Virus record (IMG/VR): IMGVR_UViG_3300027969_000039 | Location: 1-64,000 of that record | Direction: 5' to 3' (one strand) | Length of the DNA: 64,000 nucleotides | In this document: positions 26,270-57,820 of the stretch, in pieces | Layout of the letters: every line of letters starts with the position of its first letter | Numbering within the stretch: the first letter of the stretch is position 1 | The notes under the pieces: model-generated | What the model saw: only the letters and a program-made list of their open reading frames with translations | Told to the model about the DNA's origin: nothing | The model's database searches: none | Program-made: the position numbers and the translations under genes

Positions 26270-27757
26270 TCATTTGTATGTAAGTTTTTCAACATCAAAT
26301 GGATAATTAGCCTCTTTATAAAATGCTTTTCTTTGTGTAAGATGCCGTTTTGCAAACTTACAATTACTTGTGATATCCCAAATCTGCACGAAATTTTTAT
26401 CTTCTGCTTTACGGATACCACGACCAATACTTTGTATCACCCGAACAAAACTCTTACCCGGTTCAATAAGAACAAGATTAAAGATTCGGGGAATGTTAAT
26501 ACCAACTGCTGCTACACCATAGGTAGCGATAATGATTTTGTTAGTTGCTGTTGCAACTTCATCATATTGTTCTTTGCGTTCATCCATACCAGTATTGCCT
26601 GATACAAACACCACATCATATTCTGTTTTAAAATTACGCAATAGTTCGGCTAATTTGTTATGTAATTCTTTACCGGCTGCCACCCTATCAACAAGTATCA
26701 ATGTATTACCACTGTTCTTAATTGTATCAACCAATTGAGTAATTTTATTTAATCGTTTATCATCTTCAAGTAAGTATTTCAACTCACTCTGGTAGTTACT
26801 AAACTCGACACCATCTTGTAATTGAACAATGTTAACATGGCATTGTGATAATACACCTCTATCTTGCAATTCACTAGCAGATAGTTTGTTAATAACATTA
26901 CCTAGACTGATAAAGATAGCTTGACTTGCGAATTTTTCTTTAGGAATAGTACCAGTCAGTCCCCAACGAATTGGAATCGTACTCATTATTCCAGTCAACA
27001 GTTCTTTTAGTGCATCTGCTTTGGCCATGTGAACCTCGTCTACCATGACACAAACTACACCTTCAAGGAAGTCACCAATCTCAACTTCTGCTTCACCTGC
27101 TTTTGTTTTCTTAAGCATGTTGTTAAGACTCTGCCAAGTACAGATCGTATGTGTCTTGTTGTATTCTTTTCTATCACCAAAGTATACACCAACATCTAAT
27201 CCTAGATTAATGTAATCGGCTTCGGTTTGTGTTACAAGACTTTTGTTTGGAACGATAACAATACTGCGCCCGTAACTTTCAATAGACCAGCTTAGTGCTG
27301 CTGTGATTAATGTCTTGCCAGCGCCTGTAGCAATCTCTTGTAATGATTGTGGGTTCTTTAGAAACTCATTAATGATTGATATCTGATAGTCACGCAATAC
27401 TACAGGTTGTCCTGCGATTGGATGACCTTCGGGCCAATTCTTATGTTTGAATGTCTCTTCGGACACTTCAGCAAAATTGAAAGTTGTACCGTATGTTCGC
27501 AAATCCTCTAGTTCAATATCATAGTCCCTGCTATCAATAAAGGGTAGTATTTCGGGTAGTAGATTGACATAGCTACTACCAGCAAGACTAAAGAAACTTA
27601 CCTTACCATTCCATCTACCTAACCGTACCGCAGGAAGATACCTTGCACCGGGCACTTCATACTCAAACATCTTTACCAATGCTTTTCGTTCACTTAATTC
27701 TAAGCCTTCGATTTTTACATTGACCTCATCCTTGACAATTATTTTGCATTGTTTCAT
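26270..27757 (-). CDS. uvsW: UvsW-like SF2 DNA helicase
   Basis: LRDYQ, ATGAGKT, VDEVH, GLTGT, GINIP, QSIGRGIR. Confidence 0.93.
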   Translation of the reverse strand: MKQCKIIVKDEVNVKIEGLELSERKALVKMFEYEVPGARYLPAVRLGRWNGKVSFFSLAGSSYVNLLPEILPFIDSRDYDIELEDLRTYGTTFNFAEVSEETFKHKNWPEGHPIAGQPVVLRDYQISIINEFLKNPQSLQEIATGAGKTLITAALSWSIESYGRSIVIVPNKSLVTQTEADYINLGLDVGVYFGDRKEYNKTHTICTWQSLNNMLKKTKAGEAEVEIGDFLEGVVCVMVDEVHMAKADALKELLTGIMSTIPIRWGLTGTIPKEKFASQAIFISLGNVINKLSASELQDRGVLSQCHVNIVQLQDGVEFSNYQSELKYLLEDDKRLNKITQLVDTIKNSGNTLILVDRVAAGKELHNKLAELLRNFKTEYDVVFVSGNTGMDERKEQYDEVATATNKIIIATYGVAAVGINIPRIFNLVLIEPGKSFVRVIQSIGRGIRKAEDKNFVQIWDITSNCKFAKRHLTQRKAFYKEANYPFDVEKLTYK

Positions 27758-27855: not shown

Positions 27856-28887
27856 TCAAAGATTCTTCATGCAAGTTGACTTCGCAAGTTCATGCCAGTT
27901 GCCAGGGTTGATCTTTACCAAGTCAGCAATCTTCAACACCATACGCAGGCTGATCTCACGCAATTGATTGCAGTTGGCCCACATGTATTCCATGACACTT
28001 TCTTCCTGCTCTTTAGTAAAAGCATAGTCAACAAACAAGCCGGGGTCAGCATCACGATGCACCTGCTTGATACGCATCATTTTATCACGTTCGGTGTTGA
28101 TAGTCAAATCCAGAAAGTGACAACGACTTTGCAATGCATCCAAATGAGGTTGCATTTTACCTGATTTTTTAGAATCAAACGATTTGTTTGTGATGAAGAT
28201 GATAGAGCCGTGAAAGTTGAAAGTATTGGGCACTCCCTCTTCGCGTAGAATACGTGAATCTTTGTTGTAAGAGATACGCCGTGTCTTGCTAGAATCCAAT
28301 GCACCTTTCAGGATGTTGACCGCATCTTGATCGTCCCAGATATCACAGTCATCAAACACCAACACGTTTTTAGCGTCAGAATATTTGTACAGTAATACGA
28401 ACAAGCCGATAGCAGACATCGCGCCTTTGACAGTCTCAAAACGGATCTTGCGATCTGCAATATGATCAAACATGCTAGCTTTTTCCATCTGCAATGTCAC
28501 GCCGTGACTCTTGCCGACACCGGGAGGGCCTGTCACAATCATAGCACGGATATCACCGTTGATACATGCTTTTGACATCTCATCCAATACTGCAAAACGA
28601 CCTGCGATACGGTCCATCGCTTCCTTATCAGTCTCGGTAGACACTTCTGCCTTTGCCTTGAATTCTACTGTATTGCCTACCACCGTTTCTCCATTCATGA
28701 ATTGAATATCTTCAATGCTTCCGACATTGACACGGACCTGAGGTCCACCCACTGCAAACTGACCATCATTCTTAACAGTAACAAATCCACCCTTCTTACC
28801 AACTTGATAACCTTTGACTAGGGTGAACACTTCACCAGATACAGGGTTATTGCGATAAGAACCAGAGAGAATGCGAATTGTTGACAT
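27856..28887 (-). CDS. AAA+/P-loop ATPase (early)
   Basis: GPPGVGKS Walker A; VLVFDDCD Walker B; IIFITN; ALQSRC. Confidence 0.85.
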   Translation of the reverse strand: MSTIRILSGSYRNNPVSGEVFTLVKGYQVGKKGGFVTVKNDGQFAVGGPQVRVNVGSIEDIQFMNGETVVGNTVEFKAKAEVSTETDKEAMDRIAGRFAVLDEMSKACINGDIRAMIVTGPPGVGKSHGVTLQMEKASMFDHIADRKIRFETVKGAMSAIGLFVLLYKYSDAKNVLVFDDCDIWDDQDAVNILKGALDSSKTRRISYNKDSRILREEGVPNTFNFHGSIIFITNKSFDSKKSGKMQPHLDALQSRCHFLDLTINTERDKMMRIKQVHRDADPGLFVDYAFTKEQEESVMEYMWANCNQLREISLRMVLKIADLVKINPGNWHELAKSTCMKNL

Positions 28888-28920: not shown

Positions 28921-28949
28921 ATTATACACTAATGCCCATTTGTTGTCAA
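28921..28949 (-). promoter_or_regulatory. sigma70 early promoter (variant)
   Basis: TTGACA-17 nt-TATAAT followed by family-type leader CTTAATCAGTTAA..AAAGGA. Confidence 0.85.
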
Positions 28950-29164
28950 GCCTTGAGTATGTCCACGATACGCTGATGTATCAGGTCCATTTCAGCCTGC
29001 TCAACATAGAAGTCGGTCTTGGGGTCATAGTACTGACCTTGGGCAGTATCGTAGTACAGGACATGACCGGAGAAATTGAAGGGACCTTCTAGACCCTTGC
29101 GAGGACCATACTTGGTACGCATCTCATCCATTTGCGTCTTGTCTGCGATAACTTTGTAACCCAT
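28946..29164 (-). CDS. small early hypothetical protein (cassette gene)
   Basis: MGYKVIADK...LYYDTAQGQYYDPKTDFYV; AAGGAG RBS; stop TGA inside next TTGACA. Confidence 0.75.
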   Translation of the reverse strand: MGYKVIADKTQMDEMRTKYGPRKGLEGPFNFSGHVLYYDTAQGQYYDPKTDFYVEQAEMDLIHQRIVDILKA

Positions 29165-29194
29165 CAGAAACTCCTTTTGACTGAATAAGACTCT

Positions 29195-29223
29195 ATTATA
29201 TACCCAAAACCATTTAATGTCAA
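29195..29223 (-). promoter_or_regulatory. 29-bp repeated early promoter, copy 1
   Basis: TTGACATTAAATGGTTTTGGGTATATAAT. Confidence 0.92.
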
Positions 29224-29414
29224 CTAAAATCACAAGCCTTATAGACTGCTTCCTGTACTGCGGTATCAGTAACTTCCTCAAAACGCTCGTCCTGAGCCAA
29301 GGCCTTGAGCAATCCTCGAACAACAGACCAACTCAAGTTTTGACTGATTGCCAACTTTACTATGGATCCAACTGCATCATTACCAGCGTCTGTAAACATT
29401 GCGAAATTTGTCAT
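29220..29414 (-). CDS. small early hypothetical protein (cassette gene)
   Basis: 64 aa; RBS; stop in -35 of next promoter. Confidence 0.75.
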   Translation of the reverse strand: MTNFAMFTDAGNDAVGSIVKLAISQNLSWSVVRGLLKALAQDERFEEVTDTAVQEAVYKACDFS

Positions 29415-29448
29415 TTTCTAAGTCCTTTAATTAACTGTCTAAGTATGT

Positions 29449-29477
29449 ATTATATACCCAAAACCATTTAATGTCAA
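29449..29477 (-). promoter_or_regulatory. 29-bp repeated early promoter, copy 2
   Basis: identical to copy 1. Confidence 0.92.
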
Positions 29478-29662
29478 GCCGGTAGAACAACTTCAGTTGG
29501 AATTTGAGACTCACGCCAGGCATTCATATAGGCTTCACGCTCGGCCCGAACCTTGAGGATGCTCCGACTAAAGCGGCGGTCATAGTAGGCCCACGCACCG
29601 CTATCTACCCAGGTTTGGCGGCTGCATCGGACTTTGTTTACCTTGTGTTTTCTCATTTTCAT
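29474..29662 (-). CDS. small basic hypothetical protein
   Basis: 62 aa; stop in -35. Confidence 0.65.
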   Translation of the reverse strand: MKMRKHKVNKVRCSRQTWVDSGAWAYYDRRFSRSILKVRAEREAYMNAWRESQIPTEVVLPA

Positions 29663-29665
29663 ATA

Positions 29666-29932
29666 TTAAGCCCGGTAAGTAGAATAATTACGGATTTTGC
29701 TTTGTTTATTAGCATGGCTTTCGTTGAATTTAATCTCATAACCACGCTGACGTAGTGCATTGATCAGTACTGACAGGTCGCAGTCTTCTTCCAAGAAAGC
29801 ATTGGTACCGTTCTGGTAGCTGTAAGTACTAATCTTATCAGCGATACCAAGTGCTACCAACTTTGCTTTGGGGAAGCGGGCCCATGCATGACCCGGGTCT
29901 GCGAACACTTTGATAGAGATTTTTTTAGTCAT
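29666..29932 (-). CDS. conserved hypothetical protein
   Basis: DPGHAW...ISTYSY...FLEEDCD motif seen in phage/mobile-element proteins. Confidence 0.7.
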   Translation of the reverse strand: MTKKISIKVFADPGHAWARFPKAKLVALGIADKISTYSYQNGTNAFLEEDCDLSVLINALRQRGYEIKFNESHANKQSKIRNYSTYRA

Positions 29933-29943
29933 TTTGAGGTCCT

Positions 29944-30198
29944 TTACAATACTTGAGAAACTGAATAGTTATTCACTTTTGTGATATTTTCAACATGCCA
30001 ATCAATTATAGACTGTTCAGTATTGAGCGGCAATTCTCTAAAGTAAAGAGTTTTGCCTAGCATTACTTTATCTTTTGCGTTTAGCTTAGTGTAGTCACTA
30101 GCAGCAATCAGCAAACAAATTTCTTCGTTGCTGTAGGGCCGCTTTTTGACAGACACTTTAAAATACAAAGTACTGATTGCATTTGCTTTGAATTTCAT
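29944..30198 (-). CDS. small early hypothetical protein
   Basis: 84 aa directly after promoter copy 3. Confidence 0.7.
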   Translation of the reverse strand: MKFKANAISTLYFKVSVKKRPYSNEEICLLIAASDYTKLNAKDKVMLGKTLYFRELPLNTEQSIIDWHVENITKVNNYSVSQVL

Positions 30199-30225
30199 AG
30201 AGACCTTTCAACTGAATAAGACTCT

Positions 30226-30254
30226 ATTATATACCCAAAACCATTTAATGTCAA
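30226..30254 (-). promoter_or_regulatory. 29-bp repeated early promoter, copy 3
   Basis: identical to copy 1. Confidence 0.92.
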
Positions 30255-30469
30255 CCAAGGACCTCAGTCACAGTATAATTATACCGTGTATAACCAACGT
30301 CAGTGGATCCACCATAACCAGCAAAACTCTTATTGTTCATTGCCAACTTAGCAGTACCCTTCCGAGCCATTTTTTGTGCCTCGTTGTACCAATAAGCGCC
30401 TTCAGTTATCCGTGTATGTCCACTAGCGGTTTCACGCCGTACTACATCAAAATTAAAACTGCGTACCAT
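30251..30469 (-). CDS. small hypothetical protein
   Basis: start refined to MVRSFNF; stop in -35. Confidence 0.6.
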   Translation of the reverse strand: MVRSFNFDVVRRETASGHTRITEGAYWYNEAQKMARKGTAKLAMNNKSFAGYGGSTDVGYTRYNYTVTEVLG

Positions 30470-30470
30470 T

Positions 30471-30602
30471 TTATTGCTCCATCGGGTCACCAAGTGTATA
30501 CTCGGTGATCCATTCAATTGTAAAATCTTCACCTCTATGTTCTGCAACATAGATGCAAAGTGCTTCCAGCGTACGGAAAATCAAATCGCCAATTCTATAC
30601 AT
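30471..30602 (-). CDS. 43-aa hypothetical protein
   Basis: MYRIGDLIFRTLEALCIYVAEHRGEDFTIEWITEYTLGDPMEQ; TAATG coupling to upstream gene. Confidence 0.55.
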   Translation of the reverse strand: MYRIGDLIFRTLEALCIYVAEHRGEDFTIEWITEYTLGDPMEQ

Positions 30603-30976
30603 TATGCCACCTTCCGAAAATATTGATAGGGCAAGCCCAGATCATAGCACAGATATTCCCAGTCGCCATTAGCGTTGCTAGCGTCCATGATCCAGCGCAA
30701 TGCAGTCTCACGGTCACGCGCGCCCATGCAGATAGTGTTGGTGACATGCTGCTCAAACTTATCCACAGCTTCCTTCTCAGCAACCTTACGCTGGGCTTCC
30801 TCACGCACGATCACAGCTTCCAAACTTGCAAACTCCAGTTGGAAGTCTTGCAGCGTCCAAGTGCTGGTGTCGATACCACGAGGGCGAACACCATGTGCGT
30901 CCTTGTACATATCCCAGTAGATGCACTGGGCTTGTTCCAAGTCAGACATTTGTTCCCAAGTAGTGAATTCAGACAT
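30602..30976 (-). CDS. conserved phage hypothetical protein
   Basis: IYWDMYKDAHGVRPRG motif; start refined to MSEFTTW. Confidence 0.75.
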   Translation of the reverse strand: MSEFTTWEQMSDLEQAQCIYWDMYKDAHGVRPRGIDTSTWTLQDFQLEFASLEAVIVREEAQRKVAEKEAVDKFEQHVTNTICMGARDRETALRWIMDASNANGDWEYLCYDLGLPYQYFRKVA

Positions 30977-31005
30977 ATTTGTTCCTTTAATCAATCTAAG
31001 CCTCT

Positions 31006-31034
31006 ATTATAGACCCAAAACCATTTAATGTCAA
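31006..31034 (-). promoter_or_regulatory. 29-bp repeated early promoter, copy 4
   Basis: TTGACATTAAATGGTTTTGGGTCTATAAT (1 mismatch). Confidence 0.92.
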
Positions 31035-31228
31035 CCGAAAACAAATTCCCTGACCCACTCAAAACGGGTAGTAGAAGGGACCCACTTGAAGTGTTCCCGC
31101 TTGCGGCTTATCTTCTCAAAATCCATGCAGACCATGACCCAACCCTTCTCAGGGCTGAAGCCAACTGTTTCTGCAACACGGACTACTTCGACCATGCTGC
31201 CGTCTGTCATCTTTGCTACAGTAGTCAT
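31031..31228 (-). CDS. small hypothetical protein
   Basis: 65 aa; GGAG RBS; stop in -35. Confidence 0.7.
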   Translation of the reverse strand: MTTVAKMTDGSMVEVVRVAETVGFSPEKGWVMVCMDFEKISRKREHFKWVPSTTRFEWVREFVFG

Positions 31229-31238
31229 TTTCTACTCC

Positions 31239-31400
31239 TTACGCAAACGATCCACGCACTTCTTTAGCGCCGGGGATTTCTTCACATTCACATACCCAGT
31301 CAGAGAATGATTCGTAGTATCCCACGAAATACTCCGGACGCATTTCAGTCTTGCAGTATGGGCACACTGGCATCACAATTGGTTCTATTTTTTCAGACAT
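31239..31400 (-). CDS. 53-aa zinc-ribbon protein
   Basis: MSEKIEPIVMPVCPYCKTEM...WVCECEE; AAGGAG RBS; below ORF-track cutoff. Confidence 0.7.
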   Translation of the reverse strand: MSEKIEPIVMPVCPYCKTEMRPEYFVGYYESFSDWVCECEEIPGAKEVRGSFA

Positions 31401-31430
31401 AATGTTCTCCTTTAATCAATCTAAGAGTAC

Positions 31431-31459
31431 ATTATATACCCAAAACCATTTAATGTCAA
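31431..31459 (-). promoter_or_regulatory. 29-bp repeated early promoter, copy 5
   Basis: identical to copy 1. Confidence 0.92.
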
Positions 31460-31602
31460 GTTTGGGTAACCTTATTTACCGCAGATTCAGCATCTTTTTT
31501 TCCTGTAGGACCGAAAAAGTGCCATGGATATCCGTGTACTACGGCTACCCACCCGGGGGTTTTCCTGCCGTAGTACACGCTTGCTTTTACCAAAAAAGCC
31601 AT
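31456..31602 (-). CDS. 48-aa ORF starting at the ATG inside a degenerate promoter repeat
   Basis: MAFLVKASVYYGRKTPGWVAVVHGYPWHFFGPTGKKDAESAVNKVTQT; AAGGA 10 nt upstream; stop in -35 of copy 5. Confidence 0.5.
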   Translation of the reverse strand: MAFLVKASVYYGRKTPGWVAVVHGYPWHFFGPTGKKDAESAVNKVTQT

Positions 31603-31608
31603 TTAATG

Positions 31609-31884
31609 TCAATCCTTTTTCATAACATATTCAAACAGGATCCACTTGGCACGATTGAGACATTGACGGGCATCTTCGGCCCGCATGAAGTCAACTTCAC
31701 CGTACTCGGTGCTGACCATTTCTTGGGCGTCACTCATCAGGCTAGCAGCCATCATAGCAGGACCGGAGAATTTGAAAGTGAAACTAGATTCCACAGACTC
31801 ACGCATACCTGCTTCGGTCACGCCATACATGCGGACTTCACGCTTTTGTTTCTCGGTCAGTAGATCATACACGGTTGCAGTCAT
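31609..31884 (-). CDS. small early hypothetical protein
   Basis: 91 aa; AAGGAG RBS; stop in degenerate -35 at 31607-31612. Confidence 0.75.
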   Translation of the reverse strand: MTATVYDLLTEKQKREVRMYGVTEAGMRESVESSFTFKFSGPAMMAASLMSDAQEMVSTEYGEVDFMRAEDARQCLNRAKWILFEYVMKKD

Positions 31885-31917
31885 AAAAAGCTCCTTTAGT
31901 TAACTGTCTATAAGAGC

Positions 31918-31946
31918 ATTATATACCCAAAACCATTTAATGTCAA
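31918..31946 (-). promoter_or_regulatory. 29-bp repeated early promoter, copy 6
   Basis: identical to copy 1. Confidence 0.92.
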
Positions 31947-32818
31947 GTTTTGGTAAAGTCTATTTCCCAGTTTTTTAGATGAAAATAACTAATTCCGTCC
32001 CGTTCCATATGCTTATAAAGCCCTTCTAGGGGAACAGAATCTTGCTCAAAAAAGTGTTCCCAAAGATGATTCAATTTGTTGTCAAGTGGAATTTCAATTT
32101 TGCAAAGTTTGTTGTCATCATCTTTCAACCAGTATTCTGAAAATTTATTTGTTTTATGTTTAACAACAAACTTTTTAATAGGCTTTAAAGTTTTTGTACC
32201 TGACCAGGCTGTAGTGTGTACGGGGAATTCAAACCTTGTATTCAATTCTCTAACCATTTCATCAAATTCAATATCATATTCATAGAATTCAGGTAGACGA
32301 TAAATTATCGGCATCAATTCTTCTCTGACTACTTTACTATCACCGTGGATAAATGTACTTAAATCTTTTCTAAATTTAGTTAACCTTTGTTCACGCAAGG
32401 TCAACACCACGAGTTTCTTGCTGTAATAATCACGGATGACATTAGCCTTATCTCTATCTTCCTGAATCATTTCTCTGAACAAGATACTATCAGTAAGTTT
32501 AGTCGGTCTATCATTGGGATTAGCTAAAATATCAATTTTGTGACTGAGCAGTGTTCGCAATCTATGCCAAGTAACACTCAATGCTAATACATCTTCTGTA
32601 GTCTCATACACTTCATATTTTTTTACATACGAACTATCTTGATACAAGTCATCCCAAGATGTAGTACCATTCAATCCTGCAAGAGTATGAATATTGAGTG
32701 GTGAGGGGTTTTGTGTAGTAGCCCCGATGCTACCTTTAGTGATAGCATTACCATATATTGCAAGTTGTTTCTGTACTGCAAGTTGTTTCTGTAGTATGTT
32801 TATGCTTGAATTAGCCAA
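31943..32818 (-). CDS. hypothetical protein
   Basis: 291 aa; own TTGACA-17-TAAAAT promoter at 32845-32873; stop in -35 of copy 6. Confidence 0.65.
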   Translation of the reverse strand: MANSSINILQKQLAVQKQLAIYGNAITKGSIGATTQNPSPLNIHTLAGLNGTTSWDDLYQDSSYVKKYEVYETTEDVLALSVTWHRLRTLLSHKIDILANPNDRPTKLTDSILFREMIQEDRDKANVIRDYYSKKLVVLTLREQRLTKFRKDLSTFIHGDSKVVREELMPIIYRLPEFYEYDIEFDEMVRELNTRFEFPVHTTAWSGTKTLKPIKKFVVKHKTNKFSEYWLKDDDNKLCKIEIPLDNKLNHLWEHFFEQDSVPLEGLYKHMERDGISYFHLKNWEIDFTKT

Positions 32819-32955: not shown

Positions 32956-33417
32956 TTACGATATTGATATATCTTCCATGCCGGCCGCTCTTAAACGTAC
33001 AATGTGACCTAGCATGAAATTTTTTGATTCAAATGCTTTGATTATACCAAGCCAACGATTCCTTAATAATGCTACTTCGTTAATCAATATTTCATATTCA
33101 ATAACTTCATCTTCACCCTCAACATACTTGTCAGCATCACGGCTTGTCAATGCTCTATTATATGCTTCTAAATATTTTTGAAAATGTGTTCGGCGAATTT
33201 TCCGTAACTGAATATTCAAGTAGTTAAGTACCGCTTCCACTTCTTGTAACTGATTGAATCTATGTTCGGTAATGCCGGGTAAAGCGGCAATGTTCTTTTC
33301 AACATTGCCGTATATCTTTACCTCTTTCTTAGCATTATCTAATTCAGTTTCAAAGTGTTGAATAAAATCAGGTATCACAGCCAGATTGACTGTTATCCTT
33401 GTGTACCAATTTGACAT
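32956..33417 (-). CDS. uvsY: recombination mediator UvsY
   Basis: KYLEAYNRALTSRDADKYVEGE...IIKAFESKNFMLGHIVRLRAAG; next to uvsX. Confidence 0.85.
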   Translation of the reverse strand: MSNWYTRITVNLAVIPDFIQHFETELDNAKKEVKIYGNVEKNIAALPGITEHRFNQLQEVEAVLNYLNIQLRKIRRTHFQKYLEAYNRALTSRDADKYVEGEDEVIEYEILINEVALLRNRWLGIIKAFESKNFMLGHIVRLRAAGMEDISIS

Positions 33418-33660
33418 TTAATCCCATTCGTCTAAGTCATCTTCTTCAAAATCTTCATCTTCCTCTGGAAAATGCTCGTCTGCATAACCCTTCAATGCTT
33501 TAGTGATATCTTTGTCCTTGAAGGCATCTTTGATATCTTCAATCTCATAATTGTTATCAATTAAAAAATTAACAAGAGTATCTGCCGCATCATCACGCTC
33601 ACTTAAATCAATATGTTCACGCAATGCATCCCAAACTTCAGCGATTATATCTAAACTCAT
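33418..33660 (-). CDS. small acidic hypothetical protein
   Basis: 80 aa, D/E-rich tail. Confidence 0.65.
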   Translation of the reverse strand: MSLDIIAEVWDALREHIDLSERDDAADTLVNFLIDNNYEIEDIKDAFKDKDITKALKGYADEHFPEEDEDFEEDDLDEWD

Positions 33661-34724
33661 TCTGTAACTTCCTCCTTAGATGTTACATTACTTATCACAC
33701 TTTTAGTTTTTCCTGTATATTCAAGCATTACTTTATCTAGTATGCCGTCTTTGTTAGCTTCCCAACCTTTGCGAAACGCTTTGAGAATCTCGCCATCTTC
33801 GGTAGTGTAAACTAAACTGTTGCCTTCTTTCTTCAAAGCACCGGACTTCTCAAGCATATCAGTTAAGCCACTGTATGGACTCATGCCTGTCTCGTATGGA
33901 ATCTTGACTTGGATGCTCTCAAAAGGTTTCGCATAGCGAGTTTTCATAATCTTACAAGCAGCACGGATACCATTCACTTCAGCAACCTTGTTACCATCCT
34001 CATCCTCTTTAAGTTTGAGTTTTTTCATAGCAACAACAATTGAACTTGCGTAAACAAAACCTTGACCACCACTGATTTTATCATCTGGATCAAACATATC
34101 TTGACTTGCGTATGTGTGATTAGTAGCAACTAATCCTACATTGTGACTACCAAACATATTGACACAGTTACGAACAAGTGCTGTTAGTGCTTTGGGCTTG
34201 CGACCCATGTCACCTTTCATATCACCTGCTTCAAACTGATTAACGTCAGTTGGAGTCAATAGCATACCAAGACTGTCAATGACAAATAATACTTTTGGTT
34301 TGTCATCTTCTGACATTGCTTTATATGACTTCATAAATTCTGATATAGTTTTACCTACATCATCAATCATAGCCATGTTGAGTTTAAGCAATTTAGTTTC
34401 GCTTGTATCTACACCTAATGCGTGTAGCCATTTTTCATCTAAGGCATTTTCGCTGTCAATTAAGACAACATAGATTCCTTGTTGTTGTGCGTGTCTGACG
34501 AGGTTTCCGGAGCAGATGAAACTTTTTCCTGATCCAGACTCTCCGGCAAAGACAGTAACTTTACCAAGAGGTACACCTTTGTTAAAATCACCGCTAATGA
34601 GATAATTGAGTCCATAATTTCCTGTAGAGATCCAATCGGTTGGATCATTGTATCCTATGCTAAGTCCCTCAATACTTTTTGTAATCTCTCTACGGAACTT
34701 GCTTACATCAAATGGTTTTGCCAT
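33657..34724 (-). CDS. uvsX: RecA-like recombinase UvsX
   Basis: GESGSGKS, DSENA, VIDSLG, NHTY, SGGQG..YASS. Confidence 0.93.
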   Translation of the reverse strand: MAKPFDVSKFRREITKSIEGLSIGYNDPTDWISTGNYGLNYLISGDFNKGVPLGKVTVFAGESGSGKSFICSGNLVRHAQQQGIYVVLIDSENALDEKWLHALGVDTSETKLLKLNMAMIDDVGKTISEFMKSYKAMSEDDKPKVLFVIDSLGMLLTPTDVNQFEAGDMKGDMGRKPKALTALVRNCVNMFGSHNVGLVATNHTYASQDMFDPDDKISGGQGFVYASSIVVAMKKLKLKEDEDGNKVAEVNGIRAACKIMKTRYAKPFESIQVKIPYETGMSPYSGLTDMLEKSGALKKEGNSLVYTTEDGEILKAFRKGWEANKDGILDKVMLEYTGKTKSVISNVTSKEEVTE

Positions 34725-34744
34725 TGATAATCTCTCTTTCTTTG

Positions 34745-34984
34745 TTATCTGTTGTTTGTACCTGTTAAGTACAGTTTATCATTAAATGATAATTTATCAA
34801 GTATATCGGGACATTTTTCAGCCATTGAATCAATTTCCCAATCTTGTGGATAGTGTCTTAGTGCGGCTCTTGCACGATCTCTGATTAAACTAGGTACTCG
34901 TGGAGTACGACCAGGATCACACAATTCCTCTAATAATTTTTTACCTTGCTTCATGGCACGGTATCTTTCGTCTGGTAATGTCAT
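34745..34984 (-). CDS. conserved hypothetical protein (MTLPDER family)
   Basis: MTLPDERYRA...PRVP..IR..A...LRHYP. Confidence 0.65.
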   Translation of the reverse strand: MTLPDERYRAMKQGKKLLEELCDPGRTPRVPSLIRDRARAALRHYPQDWEIDSMAEKCPDILDKLSFNDKLYLTGTNNR

Positions 34985-34998
34985 AGTGTTCTCCTAAG

Positions 34999-35018
34999 AT
35001 AGGGGCCGTAGCCCCTAT
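34999..35018 (-). terminator. stable hairpin with cUACGg tetraloop after gene 32
   Basis: ATAGGGGC-TACG-GCCCCTAT; weak U-tract, so it may be a stabilising/processing hairpin. Confidence 0.5.
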
Positions 35019-35024
35019 ATAGAT

Positions 35025-36026
35025 TTAAGCAGCCTTTTGGCGACTACGAATCATCGCCAAAATATCTTGTGCTTTGTCACTTGATGTATTTGCTGCTGGA
35101 ACAACTACTGGAGCACTAGTGAAAGATGCTTCTGCTGCCGCAACATCATCTTCCCATGCGGGAGTATTAGTTGCTACTGGTGCAGTACGAACTGGCAATG
35201 CTGATTCAGTTACTGAACCTGCTGGAGCATCTAAGCCCCATGGGCGAAAGTAGTTACCCCAACGTTCGTTGTCGTAAGGTTGACCATCTACTGATGCCTC
35301 AAACATTTCTTTCATAATGCGTAGTTCAGCTTCACCTGGCTTCTTAGGCAAGAAGTCACTAAGATTAAACAATCCATGTGCTTCAATTGCTGCTTGTTCA
35401 GCCTCAGTCAATGCTGTTTCTCTACGTGCCCAGTTACTTGTACTGTAATCTGCATATCCACCCTTACTAGACTTCTTAATATTGAAGTCAAGACCGCGAA
35501 TATAGTCAGTTGGCAATTCCATGATTTCAGGATCAAGTAATCCACTCTTAACGATTGGGATGATTTGCGGGCTGATAACGAATCTACGAATTGGATTCGC
35601 AGGAGTCTTGTCATCACCCAATGGGTTTTGACGCACAAAGCCTTGAAAAATGTAACTACGCTTTTTCCAATACTTGTTAGCCATTTCTTTCAATGTCTCA
35701 TCTTTGTACCAAGGACGAACCTCAGCCAAGATAGGGCATGTAGAACCATCGTTATACATTTCTACGCATGGAACTTGTACAACTAATTGTTTTGCTCCAC
35801 TGTCACCTTTAACTCCATTGAATGGAAGTTTGATGATTTGTTTTTCTACCCAGAAAAATTCGTTCTTGGAATCACCATCGGGCAAGAAACGAATACTAGC
35901 AGTAGTGCCTTCGTCCATGTTCCAGTGGGGGTAGATAGAATTATCTGATTGGGTTGTAGAACCCTTGTTGTTTGACTTATTGTCTTGCGCTGCGATACGT
36001 GCGCGGATATCTGCTAATGATGCCAT
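35025..36026 (-). CDS. gp32: single-stranded DNA-binding protein (T4 gp32-like)
   Basis: IRFLPDGD, CPIL, YWKKRSYIFQGFV, GLDFNIKK..KGGYADY..S.W; acidic tail. Confidence 0.9.
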   Translation of the reverse strand: MASLADIRARIAAQDNKSNNKGSTTQSDNSIYPHWNMDEGTTASIRFLPDGDSKNEFFWVEKQIIKLPFNGVKGDSGAKQLVVQVPCVEMYNDGSTCPILAEVRPWYKDETLKEMANKYWKKRSYIFQGFVRQNPLGDDKTPANPIRRFVISPQIIPIVKSGLLDPEIMELPTDYIRGLDFNIKKSSKGGYADYSTSNWARRETALTEAEQAAIEAHGLFNLSDFLPKKPGEAELRIMKEMFEASVDGQPYDNERWGNYFRPWGLDAPAGSVTESALPVRTAPVATNTPAWEDDVAAAEASFTSAPVVVPAANTSSDKAQDILAMIRSRQKAA

Positions 36027-39013: not shown

Positions 39014-40567
39014 TCAACTTAGTACGGCAAAGAATGGTAGTGGAGCAATGAATTCCTCGTGGTCCTTAACATAACTGTCTAATTCAAAGTGATATGAACC
39101 TAATTCCTGTATCATTCTGACAGATAATAAGCTGGCCATAATCAAGTCGTCCGTATCCCCAACTTTAGCAGCATAACTACCCGCATGTGCTACAAACGCT
39201 TTTAATTCGCTGATAAGACTACGACTATTTACGGTTAGTTTCTTGCTTTCAAGCAATGTCTTAAACTTAGCGCAAGCAGTTAATTTGCTCTTATTTGTTG
39301 TATTGAAACCTTTACGCTTCTTTCCAGGTTCACTGATAAAAATTCCTGGAATATTATTCTCTCCATATTCGTTTAATGATACCAATGCTGCTTCGCCAAT
39401 ACTATTGTTCTCTACACTATAATAGACATTGTTTGGTTCATTTGTACATTCAACAATATACTTGTTTATCTGAGCCATTAGTTTAATCTGTGTTGGGATA
39501 TCAGTTTTATTGTGCTTCCATTCACCAACTTGTGTAACTGTATTTGCCTCATATATTTGTATAGCAGCTGGGTCATTGCCTGTGCCAATACTAGGGTCTA
39601 ATGCTACTGTATAGATATTGCCTTTGACTGGTTTCTGATACCAACGAACTTGCCCCATTCTACTTACTGGTTCTATACCCTGTAAATCAAGCAATGTGTT
39701 TGGATTAATAAGTGTTTCATCTGCAATAATGAATTCACAACCAATTTCACGACGGAATCTATCTTCACCTAATTGTGCTTTCATTTCATCAGCCCACTTT
39801 TGGTCTCTGCCAGGTTGTTCTTGCCAGTCTGCTCTATATGCTTTGAATCCGTTGATACCTAGTTCTGTTGTGTTACCAAATTCATCTTCAGTTTTGTTAG
39901 CACCTTTCCAGATGAAAGCAAATTGATCCTCATCACTATTTGGGGTACTTGTGATAATTGCTTTACCACCAGTACTTAATGTTGGTGTAATGGCTGTCCA
40001 GAATTCTTTAGCGATACTTGGTCTAACGAACGCAAACTCGTCTAGGTATAACAATGTAATAGACATACCACGACCTGTATTTTCAGTAGTAGTTGCAGAA
40101 ACAATACGACTACCATTTTCAAAGTCTAATGAGCCTTTGTTATAAGTTGTTACACCTGCTTTGATATAGTCTGGGCAGTTTTCATATGCATAACGAACAC
40201 GCTGCATAATTTCTTGTGCGCCTGTGTATTTGTGTGCTGCTATAAGAATAGTACTGTCTGGTACAAACATAGCATACCAAAGTAAGTACCCAGCTGCACT
40301 AGTTGATTTGCCTGATTGTCGAGGCATTAAACTGATACTGTAGCGATAGTTATGATATGTGTTAATTAATCGTTTCTGATAGTCATAGGGATGATACACC
40401 ATACTTCCCTTAGTAGGGTGTTGTATCATAAAGAAGTTATCCATGAAGTATAGATAACCTGTGTCAGGGTCGCAACACTTTATAAAGTCCTGTAATTCCT
40501 TATCGTTCTTAAATTTTGTTTTAGTATAAGGATCTTTTACTAGAGATGCTTGACCTGTTTTATTCAT
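39014..40567 (-). CDS. terL: terminase large subunit (T4 gp17-like)
   Basis: PRQSGKS Walker A, LYLDEFAF Walker B, ITSTPN, nuclease ALDPS..G.D and DDLIMA. Confidence 0.95.
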   Translation of the reverse strand: MNKTGQASLVKDPYTKTKFKNDKELQDFIKCCDPDTGYLYFMDNFFMIQHPTKGSMVYHPYDYQKRLINTYHNYRYSISLMPRQSGKSTSAAGYLLWYAMFVPDSTILIAAHKYTGAQEIMQRVRYAYENCPDYIKAGVTTYNKGSLDFENGSRIVSATTTENTGRGMSITLLYLDEFAFVRPSIAKEFWTAITPTLSTGGKAIITSTPNSDEDQFAFIWKGANKTEDEFGNTTELGINGFKAYRADWQEQPGRDQKWADEMKAQLGEDRFRREIGCEFIIADETLINPNTLLDLQGIEPVSRMGQVRWYQKPVKGNIYTVALDPSIGTGNDPAAIQIYEANTVTQVGEWKHNKTDIPTQIKLMAQINKYIVECTNEPNNVYYSVENNSIGEAALVSLNEYGENNIPGIFISEPGKKRKGFNTTNKSKLTACAKFKTLLESKKLTVNSRSLISELKAFVAHAGSYAAKVGDTDDLIMASLLSVRMIQELGSYHFELDSYVKDHEEFIAPLPFFAVLS

Positions 40568-54002: not shown

Positions 54003-54222
54003 AAACTGTTTCAGCTTTTTCTACTAAATCACGCAAGCTAGGTTCTGTTTCAGATAACTTGAGTATGTCTTTCCAAGTAAACCATCTTTGAGTAACTTTT
54101 GTTAAAGGGTCCTCTTGTAACAAAGTACGGACAGACGATCCACTCTCTCGGGAGTAGATCGTCTTACCATGATCAGGGCTTTCTAATACTTTACCTTTAT
54201 ACTCATCAATTTGTTTCATCAT
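53974..54222 (-). CDS. hypothetical protein
   Basis: ESPDHGKTIYSRESG motif; start refined. Confidence 0.55.
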   Translation of the reverse strand: MMKQIDEYKGKVLESPDHGKTIYSRESGSSVRTLLQEDPLTKVTQRWFTWKDILKLSETEPSLRDLVEKAETVYALLKEENN

Positions 54223-55501
54223 ATAGTGCAAAAGTACCGAATGGGGGATTCGGATTTTTGTCACCATGAATGATCCAAGTTGTATCACAATAATCAGGGT
54301 CGCCCCAGCTACCACAGGGATATCCATCAGTGAATACGATCAATCGTTTAGGATCAATTGCATTTTCTTTCAAGTATTCAAAGATACAATCAAAGTCAGT
54401 ACCACCACCACCTTGTGGTTCATACTCATCAATAGTATCCATGCTATCGCTATTGAAGTCTTGTGGATTGTAAGTATTAGTATCAAAGCAGAATACATGG
54501 ACCTTGTATCCATCAAACGCATCCATCATGCCACCGATCTCACCCAAGAATGCTTGTGCTTGACTGTTGCTAATACTACCACTCATATCAAGTGATACAA
54601 CAACATCAATTTCTTCACCGGGGTTCATGCCGGGCATGATAGCATCCATGTGCCAACCTCTGCGAGAAGGGCGCATCCAAGAATAATCTGCACGGATAGC
54701 ACTAATCAGATTAGTCTGAATCAGTTCGCGCCAGGGCATGACTGGGTCAGTATGTTGTTTGATTAAACGCTCGACACCTAAGGGCAACTGACCGGCTTCG
54801 CAAGTACTTGCGGCGCTGATGATTGCTTGTTTCATTTCTTGACGCAAACGCTCACGCTCTTCGGGAGACATTTTAGGACGACCTTTGCCATTGGCTTCTT
54901 TGTCGCCATCACCATCTCCATCGTTATCTCCCTCACCTTCATCTTCAAGGTGATCGTCAATCATTTGATCCAGCAAACTATCAATATCAATATGCTTGAC
55001 ATTCTTCATCAAGTCATCATAGATTTCCTCGCTGGGCTTACCATCATACTTGCGTTCGTACAAGCATGGGACACTTGTAATAAATGTGCCGACACCGTGT
55101 CGTTTCAAGTCTGCGTTAACTGCATAGTCATTGGCGATGTTAAACATCTGAGGGTCACGATTGCCGATACGACCCATATGATCATACACTACATGCAATA
55201 CTTCATGTCCAACTAGAAACTCAACCTCTTTGGGTTTCAATAGCATAATGAAACGGCTATTGTAATAGAATTTTTGACCATCAGTAGCCGCTGTAGCGCA
55301 CCACTCGTCAGCATTAGTTAATTTGAGGCGTGTAGCAAGATTGCCAAAGAATGAATGACGCAATAGCAAACCCACACGTGCCGAAATCAATCGTTCACGG
55401 GCTTGTGCATCAATCTTAGGGTCAGTAGGTCCAACAAGTTTATCAAACTTGTCGCTACGCTTTTTCTTTTTTGTTGGGGCAATTACGCTACTCATATACA
55501 A
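54206..55501 (-). CDS. HExxH metallopeptidase + vWA domain protein (DUF2201-like)
   Basis: AATDG, HEVLH; MIDAS DMSGS, GGGTDF, FTDG. Confidence 0.88.
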   Translation of the reverse strand: MYMSSVIAPTKKKKRSDKFDKLVGPTDPKIDAQARERLISARVGLLLRHSFFGNLATRLKLTNADEWCATAATDGQKFYYNSRFIMLLKPKEVEFLVGHEVLHVVYDHMGRIGNRDPQMFNIANDYAVNADLKRHGVGTFITSVPCLYERKYDGKPSEEIYDDLMKNVKHIDIDSLLDQMIDDHLEDEGEGDNDGDGDGDKEANGKGRPKMSPEERERLRQEMKQAIISAASTCEAGQLPLGVERLIKQHTDPVMPWRELIQTNLISAIRADYSWMRPSRRGWHMDAIMPGMNPGEEIDVVVSLDMSGSISNSQAQAFLGEIGGMMDAFDGYKVHVFCFDTNTYNPQDFNSDSMDTIDEYEPQGGGGTDFDCIFEYLKENAIDPKRLIVFTDGYPCGSWGDPDYCDTTWIIHGDKNPNPPFGTFALYDETN

Positions 55502-55593: not shown

Positions 55594-56700
55594 TTAGTTA
55601 CCTGCGTCTACAATGTACTTGCCGTACTTCTTGTGGAAGTCATCAAAGTGTTTTAGTTGACTAGGCTCAATCGGCAACTTGTAAGTCTTAAGCGCAATCT
55701 TAGCACCCATCACAACCAATTCAGTTTCAAAGTTCTTCATCATGTAAGACAAGAAATTGTCAGACATTTCATGGAACTTCTTCATAGTTACCTTTTGATG
55801 TTCCAATGCATCACGCAATTCATAGCACAATGAAATTGTTAGTGAATACATTGCAGAGATTTCCTTAACATTCAAGTCAGTAACTTTACCTGACAAGATA
55901 TCGCTCGGCTCGGGCAACTTGCCAGAAATCTTGCGGTGTGCAGAAAACTTAACAGCAAGCCCTTCACCGACACTACCTGCAATCAGATTGAACAGTGTAT
56001 CAGTATCAGTGTCTGCCTCGTCATCCAACAAGTCAGACACAAAGCACCAGCTACGTGGGGTAGCAAATGCACGGCTTGAAGATTTGCTATTGAAATCGTA
56101 CAAGTCCTGTTTTGCAAAACTCAAGTAACCAACCACGTCCTTATGAATGCCTTTGTTGACTGCCCATGTCTGCCATGAAGTAAAGTCAGGGCGCATTTCC
56201 AAGTGCAAGAAACGATTAGCAAGGGGCATCGGCATACGATAAGTAACACCTTTGTCACTATCACGATTACCTGCTGCCACGATAACAACATTGTCAGGCA
56301 ACTTGTACTTACCAACACGGCGATTCAAAATTAGTTGATAGCCAGCAGCCTGTACAGCAGGCATTGCACTATTCATTTCATCTAAGAAAAGAACAATGAT
56401 AGGATATTGTGATGCGAGTTCCTCGTCAGGCAAGTCGATTGGAGCAGCCCAATCCATCTTATTGAGGTCCTTGTTGAAGTATGGGATACCGCGAATGTCA
56501 GTGGGTTCCATTTGAGCCATACGCAAGTCAATCATATGACCACCAAGTTCGGCAGTAATGTCTGCTACAACTTCGGATTTACCGATACCGGGAGGGCCCC
56601 AGAGAAACAAGGGACGCTTTGCTTTGAATGCTTTCAGAATAGCTTTGCGGGCTTGTACTGATGTTACTGTGAGATTGTCAGAGACTTGAGGTGATGCCAT
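55594..56700 (-). CDS. MoxR-like AAA+ ATPase
   Basis: GPPGIGKS, LFLDEMN, AAGNR..D, LANRF, FATPRSW. Confidence 0.9.
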   Translation of the reverse strand: MASPQVSDNLTVTSVQARKAILKAFKAKRPLFLWGPPGIGKSEVVADITAELGGHMIDLRMAQMEPTDIRGIPYFNKDLNKMDWAAPIDLPDEELASQYPIIVLFLDEMNSAMPAVQAAGYQLILNRRVGKYKLPDNVVIVAAGNRDSDKGVTYRMPMPLANRFLHLEMRPDFTSWQTWAVNKGIHKDVVGYLSFAKQDLYDFNSKSSSRAFATPRSWCFVSDLLDDEADTDTDTLFNLIAGSVGEGLAVKFSAHRKISGKLPEPSDILSGKVTDLNVKEISAMYSLTISLCYELRDALEHQKVTMKKFHEMSDNFLSYMMKNFETELVVMGAKIALKTYKLPIEPSQLKHFDDFHKKYGKYIVDAGN

Positions 56701-57816: not shown

Positions 57817-57820
57817 CTGT

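What the first reader, a model, noticed from the sequence alone, without database searches (positions are those of the whole stretch)
28921..31946. Gene-cassette array in which the upstream gene's stop codon is the TGA of each promoter's -35 box
Seen: all eight -35 hexamers in this cluster (28944, 29218, 29472, 30249, 31029, 31454, 31607, 31941) contain the terminal TGA of the gene immediately upstream (stops at 28946, 29220, 29474, 30251, 31031, 31456, 31609, 31943). The same holds at 58107. The repeat reads T-TGA-CAT-TAA, two in-frame stops, while its other two frames stay open across the promoter, so arriving in this frame 8 out of 8 times is not expected by chance (the 31456 case depends on a 48-aa ORF I called by hand). 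Inference: each unit is promoter + leader + RBS + ORF(s) joined to the next unit at the -35 box, so the repeat may act as a crossover/capture site that supplies both termination and a new promoter (an integron-like or accordion-like mechanism). The array sits between uvsW and uvsY-uvsX-gp32, the machinery that could shuffle it. Mobile promoter cassettes (PeSLs) are known in RB49-type T4 phages, but I do not know of this stop-in--35 junction being described.
Basis: partly seen in the sequence, partly recalled or inferred. Interest (0 to 1): 0.85.

Follow-up and report, generated by a model that had tools for sequence, protein, structure and literature searches.

The report
Phage promoter repeats that end genes
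An uncultured large phage carries an array of small genes separated only by near-identical strong promoters, and the upstream gene often uses the TGA inside the promoter's TTGACA box as its stop codon; this is a very compact variant of the known mobile promoter cassettes (PeSLs) of T4-like phages.

Summary
On the minus strand, all eight TTGACA hexamers between 28944 and 31946 hold the stop codon of the gene just upstream, as does the copy at 58105. Two other copies of the same repeat, at 57811 and 58518, follow genes that end on their own TAA.

It matched no cultured phage searched.

- **Frequency:** of 285 distinct junctions, 132 (46%) use the -35 TGA, as do 41 of 89 upstream-gene families. 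RB49 shows this at 3 of 33 junctions.
- **Repeat supplies the gene end:** about 45% of these families end in Gly-stop, encoded by a conserved GG just before the -35.
- **Shuffling:** relatives differ by cassette gain, loss and relocation. Differences start at the repeat, and one promoter-to-promoter cassette sits in five different gene neighbourhoods.

The best reading is PeSL-type homologous shuffling combined with extreme compaction and selection on reading frame. No integrase or attC-like site was found among the ORFs scanned. This is a new variant of a known kind, of moderate interest.

The parts
28921..28949 (-). Diverged promoter copy (TTGACAACAAATGGGCATTAGTGTATAAT). It drives the 343-aa gene 27856..28887. 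Its TGA (28946-28948) ends ORF 28946..29164.
28946..29164 (-). 72-aa cassette ORF (family 1, phrog_13298, function unknown). Its stop is the -35 TGA.
   Evidence: codon-position differences 136/103/479
29195..29223 (-). Full promoter repeat. The TGA at 29220-29222 ends ORF 29220..29414.
29220..29414 (-). 64-aa cassette ORF (family 52).
29449..29477 (-). Full promoter repeat. The TGA at 29474-29476 ends ORF 29474..29662.
29474..29662 (-). 62-aa ORF (family 85) with no promoter of its own. It is absent from relatives L025, L080 and L106, where gene family 7 abuts the promoter directly.
29666..29932 (-). 88-aa ORF (family 7). In the window it ends on TAA. In 15 relative variants the -35 TGA occupies the same codon position.
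29944..30198 (-). 84-aa ORF (family 16), the first gene of a three-gene cassette.
30226..30254 (-). Full promoter repeat. The TGA at 30251-30253 ends ORF 30251..30469.
30251..30469 (-). 72-aa ORF (family 51). A 99-aa reading from 30550 overlaps the next ORF. Homologues in L120 and L094 end on their own TAA, 17-18 nt before the -35, and have the same protein length.
30471..30602 (-). 43-aa ORF. It matches a discrete 137-nt module in L025 and L080 at 91-95% identity. My assignment of that module to gene family 117 is inferred from position.
30602..30976 (-). 124-aa ORF (family 8, phrog_21968, function unknown).
31006..31034 (-). Full promoter repeat. The TGA at 31031-31033 ends ORF 31031..31228.
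31031..31400 (-). Two-gene cassette: 53-aa ORF 31239..31400 (family 73) and 65-aa ORF 31031..31228 (family 46). Both are absent from L018 and L050.
31431..31459 (-). Full promoter repeat. The TGA at 31456-31458 ends the 48-aa ORF. The upstream arm ACCCAAAC pairs with the spacer GTTTTGGGT, giving a hairpin with the -35 in its loop.
   Evidence: (z-score -2.6)
31456..31602 (-). 48-aa ORF (family 28). Its ATG lies inside the truncated repeat copy.
31599..31612 (-). Truncated repeat (TTGACATTAAATGG, no -10 box). Its TGA ends ORF 31609..31884. It forms a 14-nt direct repeat with 31446-31459, and the two copies flank the gene-28 insertion/deletion.
31609..31884 (-). 91-aa ORF (family 3). Among relatives its last residues vary (KRD, PKT, PKD), always ending on the -35 TGA.
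31918..31946 (-). Full promoter repeat. The TGA at 31943-31945 ends gene 31943..32470/32818 (family 2). The upstream arm ACCAAAAC forms a hairpin around the -35.
   Evidence: (z-score -3.1)
26270..27757 (-). UvsW-type helicase, the downstream flank.
27856..28887 (-). 343-aa conserved AAA-like gene (phrog_1250), the first conserved gene after the array.
32956..36026 (-). Upstream flank: UvsY-like 32956..33417, UvsX/RecA 33657..34724 and a gp32-like SSB 35025..36026.
57788..58523 (-). Second small array with three full repeat copies (-35 boxes at 57811, 58105, 58518). Only the 58105 copy holds the upstream stop. The gene-23 cassette 57788..58110 occurs in five different gene neighbourhoods across the window and related contigs.
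3426..3454 (-). Isolated variant copy in a divergent intergenic region. It has no co-oriented upstream gene.

Best explanation
The locus is a hyperplastic region of an uncultured large myovirus. This phage has T4-type recombination and packaging genes, and its closest cultured relatives at UvsX are jumbo phages.

**Anatomy (shown).** Small ORFan genes under purifying selection are separated only by copies of one repeat. The repeat is (GG or ACCCAAAAC)-TTGACATTAAATGGTTTTGGGTATATAAT, followed by a leader of about 25 nt, a ribosome-binding site and an ATG. The repeat is the entire intergenic region.

**Why the stop falls in the -35 (part shown, part inferred).** An upstream ORF either ends on its own TAA flush against the repeat or runs into it. 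An ORF that runs in survives only in the frame where T-TGA-CAT-TAA terminates it. The other two frames would add a tail or fuse the ORF to the next gene. The frame bias is shown; selection as its cause is inferred.

**Mobility (shown by comparison, mechanism inferred).** The -35 and spacer stay linked to the upstream gene, while the leader stays linked to the downstream gene. Crossovers therefore fall within the 29-nt core, near the -10 box. Exchange between these repeats is most likely homologous recombination by the phage's own UvsX/UvsY/UvsW machinery. It deletes, inserts and relocates promoter-to-promoter cassettes, as described for PeSLs in RB49 and phi1.

Promoter activity itself is inferred from the perfect sigma-70 consensus.
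For: **Repeat and stop overlap**
- establish the repeat and the stop codons in the window.
With up to six substitutions allowed, these hold 440 copies.
- 132 of 285 distinct junctions stop on the -35 TGA. About 70 more have a TAA 4-8 nt upstream, and only about 4 read through in another frame.

**Family-level counts**
- 41 of 89 upstream-gene families use the -35 TGA.
- Genes with their own stop are spread evenly over the three frames (26, 24, 30). The TGA frame in total is 67 against 24 and 30 (chi-square 26.9, P = 1.4e-6).
- RB49 shows the overlap at 3 of 33 junctions (Fisher P = 3.5e-6 on junctions, 1e-4 on families).

**Repeat-derived gene ends**
- The terminal residue is Gly in 18.5 of 41 of these families, against under 5.5% in the background. 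GG at positions -2/-1 is also conserved where the gene has its own stop.

**Real genes**
- Substitutions are in excess at third codon positions in every family with at least four distinct homologues.

**Shuffling**
- Arrays at the same position between UvsY and UvsW differ widely among 55 contigs.
- 32% of homology end-points lie within 7 nt of a -35 edge, against 1.7% by chance.
- L018 lacks genes 28-73-46, L050 lacks 73-46 and L108 lacks 28. In each case the two aligned segments overlap by 23-67 nt of repeat.
- Identity profiles place the switch point between core position 22 and leader position 30.
- The gene-23 cassette aligns from the first base of one -35 to the end of the next core in five gene neighbourhoods. 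One copy is 96% identical in a different array.

**Published precedent**
- PMC2839356 and PMC4122927 describe PeSL-mediated shuffling.
Against: - Synteny also breaks at gene junctions without a promoter, at a broadly similar rate. The next gene is the same in 0.67 of pairs without a promoter and 0.54 with one. The repeats are therefore not the only exchange points.
- A conserved promoter flanked by variable genes would produce homology end-points at its edge whatever the mechanism.
- In 15 of 23 families the -35 TGA sits at the same codon position as the stop codon of homologues in another 3' context, rather than at scattered truncation points. In several of these pairs the homologue probably abuts a diverged promoter copy that my search missed. 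Simple random deletion does not obviously predict this precision.
- The stem-loop half of a PeSL is present in only a subset of copies. Overall covariation for it is weak.
- No transcript, promoter or recombination data exist for this uncultured phage.
Confidence: 0.75

Rival explanations
1. Pure compaction. The repeats are alike only because each is selected to be a strong consensus promoter. The TGA overlap is passive genome squeezing, like ATGA or TAATG start/stop overlaps. The repeats play no special role in recombination, and cassette turnover happens by illegitimate recombination at any gene boundary.
For: - Gene junctions without a promoter break synteny at a broadly similar rate.
- The overlap also occurs at 13 of 43 promoters with a different spacer in the same phages, and at 3 of 33 in RB49, including the annotated gene 59 / gene 32 junction.
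- In family 159 a simple stop-loss (TAA to AAA or AAG) extends the ORF two codons to the TGA.
Against: - Spacer and leader positions that a promoter does not require are also conserved. The core is about 91% identical between unrelated junctions.
- Deletion variants are bounded by two repeat copies that collapse into one.
- A promoter-to-promoter unit has moved between arrays.
- The leader follows the downstream gene while the -35 and spacer follow the upstream gene.
Confidence: 0.15
2. Integron-like site-specific capture. A dedicated recombinase recognises the repeat as an att-like site and inserts or excises circular cassettes there.
For: Cassette boundaries are sharp at the first base of the -35. 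The gene-28 insertion/deletion is flanked by a 14-nt direct repeat.
Against: - No integrase or recombinase domain was found in the flanking ORFs or the large ORFs scanned. Not every ORF in the window was scanned.
- Every cassette has its own promoter.
- Most copies have no attC-like fold; four of six have fold z-scores no better than shuffled sequence.
- Overlap lengths at the deletion junctions vary from 14 to 67 nt, which fits homologous exchange.
Confidence: 0.03
3. Translation-coupled attenuation. In copies with the upstream arm, the stop codon lies in the loop of a hairpin (ACCCAAAAC / GTTTTGGGT). A ribosome terminating there would keep an attenuator hairpin from forming, so read-through transcription into the next cassette would depend on translation of the upstream gene. 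The stop position would then be functional, not incidental. This could coexist with the best explanation.
For: - Hairpins at copies 31454 and 31941 fold better than shuffles (z-scores -2.6 and -3.1).
- The arm recurs before the -35 in nine junction types covering eight gene families, plus junctions with no called upstream gene.
- A compensated 11-bp variant, CACCCAATAC / GTATTGGGTG, occurs in L105, L037 and L042.
- The published PeSL subclasses include stem-loops that overlap the -35.
Against: - Six of the eight array copies lack the arm.
- Variant right arms usually pair worse, not better, with their own upstream sequence (16 better, 44 same, 62 worse).
- No U-tract follows the stem.
- The stop overlap is just as common without the hairpin.
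Confidence: 0.1

Closest known systems
PeSLs (promoter-early stem-loops) of RB49 and phi1 (Arbiol et al. 2010, PMC2839356)
   Same: - Many copies of a near-perfect sigma-70 promoter (TTGACA, 17 nt, TATAAT).
- Each ends in a Shine-Dalgarno sequence and the next gene's ATG.
- They are packed between small ORFan genes in hyperplastic regions.
- Insertions, deletions and replacements between relatives end in the motif.
- The published definition already starts the motif at the upstream gene's stop codon.
   Different: - In RB49 and phi1 the stop lies in an AT-rich tract upstream of the -35. In the RB49 sequence I examined it is a TAA 6-12 nt upstream, and only 3 of 33 junctions use the -35 TGA.
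- Here there is no AT-rich tract, and 46% of junctions use the -35 TGA.
- The stem-loop is present in only a subset here, with one arm inside the upstream coding sequence.
- The host phage belongs to a different, uncultured clade nearest to jumbo myoviruses.
PeSL variants of T4/PST and KVP40/nt-1 (Comeau et al. 2014, PMC4122927)
   Same: Clade-specific promoter cassette families serve as exchange points between otherwise unrelated sequences in hyperplastic regions.
   Different: Their -35 consensus is TTTACW or TTGYVH. TTTACW holds no TGA, and TTGYVH cannot form one at the TTGACA position. The stop overlap depends on a TTGACA-type box.
Integron gene cassettes (attC / IntI)
   Same: Arrays of small, unrelated, same-strand genes are bounded by a recurring element. 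Some integron cassettes also finish their ORF inside the recombination site (stated from general knowledge, not tested here).
   Different: No integrase was found among the ORFs scanned and there is no attC-like structure. Every unit has its own promoter, and exchange looks homologous rather than site-specific.
RB49 gene 59 / gene 32 early promoter junction
   Same: The RB49 record annotates a -35 at 142003-142008 and the end of gene 59 at 142005. The stop codon is therefore the TGA of that -35.
   Different: This is a single conserved-gene junction. It is not a repeated cassette rule.
Overlapping start/stop codons (ATGA, TAATG) in compact phage genomes
   Same: Nucleotides are shared between a gene end and the next functional element. 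Both forms occur inside these same arrays (for example TAATG and TGATG after family 8).
   Different: Here the shared element is a transcription signal, and the repeat also donates the last codon or codons.

Membership tests
PeSL (promoter-early stem-loop cassettes of T4-like phages) | Multi-copy sigma-70-like early promoter (-35, about 17 nt, -10) | tested here: met
   Seven copies in the array match 12 of 12 consensus positions. The window holds 13 motif matches against 1.6 expected. Related contigs hold 440 copies.
PeSL (promoter-early stem-loop cassettes of T4-like phages) | Stem-loop associated with the promoter (terminator or attenuator) | tested here: inconclusive
   Two of the six full copies folded (31454, 31941) have a hairpin around the -35, with z-scores -2.6 and -3.1; the other four do not. 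Helices of 8 bp or more occur in 38 of 229 junctions against 11 after shuffling. Variant arms do not covary overall.
PeSL (promoter-early stem-loop cassettes of T4-like phages) | AT-rich tract upstream of the -35 that holds the upstream stop codon | tested here: not met
   Positions -2/-1 are mostly GG, GC or AC. The stop is the -35 TGA in 46% of junctions, or otherwise a TAA flush against GG.
PeSL (promoter-early stem-loop cassettes of T4-like phages) | Sits in hyperplastic regions among small ORFan genes, ending in a Shine-Dalgarno sequence and the downstream ATG | tested here: met
   The array holds 13 ORFs of 43-124 aa. None has a PHROG match with a known function, and none of the three also scanned against Pfam has a hit. 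AAGGA or GGAG lies upstream of each ATG in the array.
PeSL (promoter-early stem-loop cassettes of T4-like phages) | Insertions, deletions and replacements between related phages end in the motif | tested here: met
PeSL (promoter-early stem-loop cassettes of T4-like phages) | Measured promoter and terminator activity; encapsidated minicircles | not testable with these tools
   The phage is uncultured, and only assembled contigs are available.
Integron | Adjacent IntI tyrosine recombinase with an attI site | tested here: not met
   The flanking and large ORFs scanned are UvsW, an AAA-like protein, UvsY, UvsX, an SSB, TerL and structural proteins. Not every ORF in the window was scanned.
Integron | attC imperfect-palindrome site at each cassette end, with promoterless cassettes read from one Pc promoter | tested here: not met
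   The recurring element is itself a promoter. Most copies show no significant fold.
Gene accordion (tandem amplification) | Tandem copies of the same gene | tested here: not met
   The 12 array ORFs that were clustered fall into 12 different families; the 43-aa ORF 30471..30602 was not clustered.

The most novel reading that the evidence does not exclude
The repeat may be a portable combined gene-end and promoter module. Its 5' edge (GG, or ACCCAAAAC) together with the -35 donates the last one to three codons and a tandem stop (TGA CAT TAA) to whatever ORF is joined in frame. Stop-less ORF fragments could then be captured, terminated and followed by a fresh promoter in a single recombination event. 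In the hairpin-bearing copies, the stop in the loop could also couple read-through transcription to translation. This would be a general engine for ORFan gene turnover in a widespread uncultured phage clade.
Probability: 0.2. Interest if true: 0.65.

Novelty: new variant of a known kind. Interest (0 to 1): 0.45.

Why it matters
- It extends PeSL-type mobile promoter cassettes to an uncultured clade of large phages outside the groups where they were described.
- It supplies an unusually large natural dataset: more than 400 repeat copies and about 290 distinct junctions, across at least 120 stretches of viral contigs.
- It shows that a regulatory repeat can also provide coding sequence, namely the terminal codon and the stop. 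This explains how such arrays can reach zero non-functional intergenic DNA.
- It gives a concrete sequence rule for annotating small phage genes and early promoters in metagenomic contigs.
- It does not reveal a new recombination system.

Tried and rejected
- **Cultured-phage matches:** megablast of the 6-kb locus and blastn of the 61-nt promoter plus leader against 50,697 phage records found nothing. No cultured close relative is available.
- **Hairpin covariation:** across 122 variant copies, pairing with the copy's own arm was better in 16, the same in 44 and worse in 62. Permuted arms gave similar helix counts. I do not claim a conserved stem-loop.
- **Synteny breaks at promoters:** my first pass found no enrichment (0.43 against 0.46). 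After filtering the difference was modest (0.67 against 0.54). The repeats are not exclusive breakpoints.
- **Closest cultured relative:** the syntenic 41 kb of Sinorhizobium phage Phosso has no TTGACA-N16-18-TATAAT site within one mismatch. The array is not a shared trait of that group.
- **Literature:** full-text searches found no description of a stop codon inside a -35 box as a recurring phage junction.
- **Rejected readings:** integron-like and accordion-like mechanisms (see the membership test).
- **Correction:** I first took the start of the family-51 gene as 30472. Re-reading the sequence puts the ATG at 30469-30467. The PHROG scan of the slightly longer translation gave no hit either way.

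Full report
**1. What is in the window**

The genes of 28921-31946 lie on the minus strand. On that strand a repeat recurs: TTGACATTAAATGGTTTTGGGTATATAAT. This is a perfect -35 box, a 17-nt spacer and a perfect -10 box. A leader of about 25 nt, an AAGGA or GGAG ribosome-binding site and an ATG follow it.

- Seven copies in the array score 12 of 12 against the sigma-70 consensus.
- The first 14 nt occur 13 times in the window, against 1.6 expected.
- The eighth site, at 31599-31612, keeps only TTGACATTAAATGG.

**2.

For all eight sites, the frame containing the TGA of T-TGA-CA is the long open frame upstream. It stays open for 48 to 299 codons (the 31607 case follows the 91-aa ORF 31609..31884). 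The other two frames stay open for at least 36 nt past the -35.

The copy at 58105 also ends a 28-aa hydrophobic ORF that has its own ribosome-binding site.

The same repeat at 58518 and 57811 follows genes that end on their own TAA, 5 and 7 nt upstream. The copy at 3449 has no co-oriented upstream gene. The window tally is therefore 9 of 11 applicable junctions.

The small ORFs are genuine genes. Substitutions against homologues concentrate at third codon positions in every family with at least four distinct homologues. None has a known function.

**3. Context**

- Downstream lie a 343-aa AAA-like gene and a UvsW helicase.
- Upstream lie UvsY, UvsX and a gp32-like SSB.
- Further upstream is a T4-type large terminase.
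- There is no nucleotide match to any of 50,697 deposited phage records.
- UvsX is 65-68% identical to those of jumbo myoviruses: Phosso, Vibrio phage 2.275.O, XbC2, CBB, GAP32 and Atu_ph07.
- Phosso shares the gene order TerL, large protein, a 339-aa hypothetical protein where the window has its SSB, RecA-like recombinase ... helicase. It has no such promoters there.

The phage is therefore not RB49-type.

**4. The repeat defines a large uncultured family**

Some come from contigs of 171-303 kb. Several are identical to the window.

Allowing up to six substitutions, these sequences hold 440 copies, all on the gene strand.

| Class (285 distinct junctions with an intact TTGACA) | Count |
|---|---|
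| Stop is the -35 TGA | 132 (46%) |
| Own TAA 4-8 nt upstream of the -35 | about 70 |
| Upstream ORF reads through in another frame | about 4 |

Counting unrelated upstream-gene families removes inheritance by descent. On that basis 41 of 89 families use the -35 TGA.

Genes with their own stop fall evenly across the three frames (26, 24, 30). The TGA frame in total is over-represented, at 67 against 24 and 30 (chi-square 26.9, P = 1.4e-6).

Two comparators:
- In 100 kb of RB49, only 3 of 33 TTGACA promoter junctions show the overlap (Fisher P = 3.5e-6). One is the annotated gene 59 / gene 32 early promoter.
- Promoters with an unrelated spacer in the same contigs show it at 13 of 43.

The arrangement is thus a trait of this lineage, is strongest at the repeat, and is not wholly unprecedented.

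**5. The repeat supplies the gene end**

Positions -2/-1 are mostly GG. G makes up about 60-65% at -2 in both junction classes, and at -1 it is 64% where the gene has its own stop and 40% where it stops on the -35 TGA. So the repeat really starts at GGTTGACA.

- The last residue is Gly (GGT) in 18.5 of the 41 families that stop on the -35 TGA, against under 5.5% in the background.
- A second class carries ACCCAAAAC directly before the -35. It appears in nine junction types covering eight gene families and gives endings such as P-K-T-stop.
- Within family 3 the last residues switch between KRD, PKT and PKD, always ending on the -35 TGA.
- In 15 of 23 families that occur in both contexts, the -35 TGA sits at the same codon position as the stop of homologues in another 3' context. 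In families 1, 7 and 24 the last Ala codon simply changes from GCA or GCG to GCT. In several of the 15 pairs the homologue probably abuts a diverged promoter copy that my search missed.
- Family 159 shows the other route, a stop-loss (TAA to AAA or AAG) that adds two codons.

**6. Cassettes move, and the differences start at the repeat**

At the syntenic position between UvsY and UvsW, 55 contigs carry very different arrays built from a shared pool of gene families.

- Homology end-points between the window and non-identical relatives fall within 7 nt of a -35 edge in 32% of cases, against 1.7% by chance.
- L018 lacks genes 28-73-46, L050 lacks 73-46 and L108 lacks 28. In each case the two aligned segments overlap by 23-67 nt of repeat.
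- L025, L080 and L106 lack gene 85.
- The gene-28 insertion/deletion is flanked by the 14-nt direct repeat TTGACATTAAATGG.
- Junction pairs with the same upstream gene but different downstream genes stay alike through the -35 and spacer, then diverge in the leader. Pairs with the same downstream gene show the reverse. The switch point lies between core position 22 and leader position 30.
- The gene-23 cassette aligns from the first base of its -35 to the end of the next core in five gene neighbourhoods. One copy is 96% identical behind genes 3-28 in L005. Copies of about 81% identity lie in the UvsY-UvsW array of other phages.

Caveat: gene junctions without a promoter also vary. The next gene is the same in 0.67 of pairs without a promoter and 0.54 with one.

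**7. Stem-loop**

Copies 31454 and 31941 can form a hairpin, ACC(C)AAAC / GTTTTGG(G)T, with the -35 in the loop (z-scores -2.6 and -3.1). This is one of the published PeSL subclasses. A compensated 11-bp variant exists in three related contigs.

Most copies lack the upstream arm, and variant arms do not covary overall. I leave this open.

**8. Mechanism and comparison**

The best-supported explanation is PeSL-type modular shuffling (PMC2839356, PMC4122927), taken to an extreme of compaction.

- The promoter repeat is the whole intergenic region.
- ORFs end flush against it or inside it.
- Only the TGA frame is viable, which yields the overlap.
- Homologous exchange within the 29-67-nt repeats relocates promoter-to-promoter units.

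It differs from published PeSLs in four ways. The stop lies in the -35 rather than in an upstream AT-rich tract. The last codon is donated by the repeat. The stem-loop is inconsistent. The host clade is different.

It is not an integron and not a gene accordion (see the membership test).

Promoter activity, recombination by UvsX/UvsY and any role of the tandem stops are inferred, not shown.

**9. Verdict**

The mechanism is a new variant of a known kind. Interest is moderate.

Noticed in passing
window 31599-31612 and 31456-31602 (minus strand): The 48-aa gene starts at the ATG inside a truncated repeat copy, giving the junction TGAcattaaATG. Relatives L018 and L108 have a full promoter there and no gene 28. 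The insertion/deletion is flanked by a 14-nt direct repeat.
   Followed up: yes
window 31431-31470 and 31918-31958 (minus strand): The last three codons of the upstream genes (ACC CAA ACT, ACC AAA ACT) pair with the promoter spacer GTTTTGG(G)T. This places the -35 and the stop codon in a hairpin loop.
   Followed up: partly
window 27814-27833 (minus strand): A strong terminator-like hairpin (AGGGGAACTTAGGTTCCCCT followed by a T-run) lies between the 343-aa gene and uvsW. It probably marks the end of the early-array transcripts.
   Followed up: no
L101, L120, L012, L046, L050, L054 (downstream of gene family 2): In these relatives a second subfamily of gene 2 (ending ...KWKLA) ends on its own TAA. 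A GC-rich hairpin of the type AAAACCCCCGATTCTGGGGGTTTTT follows, and the promoter lies about 50 nt further on. This is a classical terminator-then-promoter layout at the position where the window has the stop in the -35.
   Followed up: partly
L122 (RB49 142003-142008): The RB49 record annotates the -35 of the gene 32 early promoter so that it contains the TGA stop of gene 59. This is a single precedent for the arrangement.
   Followed up: yes
window 58107-58193 (minus strand): A 28-aa hydrophobic mini-ORF (MFFLGMLVGIVVGAYIAILVIVHTQYFG) with its own ribosome-binding site lies between gene family 24 and the promoter. It is absent from L104, where gene 24 is followed by the promoter after a 9-nt spacer.
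   Followed up: partly
window 40612-47142 (minus strand): Two large proteins with collagen triple-helix repeats (1585 aa and 582 aa) lie next to a T4-type large terminase at 39014..40567. They are probably fibre proteins.
   Followed up: no
window 54206-56700 (minus strand): A MoxR-like AAA ATPase (55594..56700) sits next to a DUF2201 metallopeptidase/VWA protein (54206..55501). The ATPase gene is driven by a diverged TTGACA promoter at 56767-56772.
   Followed up: no
every full repeat copy, e.g. window 29196-29213 (minus strand): Each promoter spacer contains a mini-ORF, ATG GTT TTG GGT ATA TAA (MVLGI-stop). It would be present on read-through transcripts. Its significance is unknown.
   Followed up: no
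related loci L058, L120, L088 and others: Tandem paralogue runs occur in related contigs away from the promoter repeats: family 0 three times in a row, and families 97, 98 and 180 twice each. They confounded the synteny statistics.
   Followed up: no
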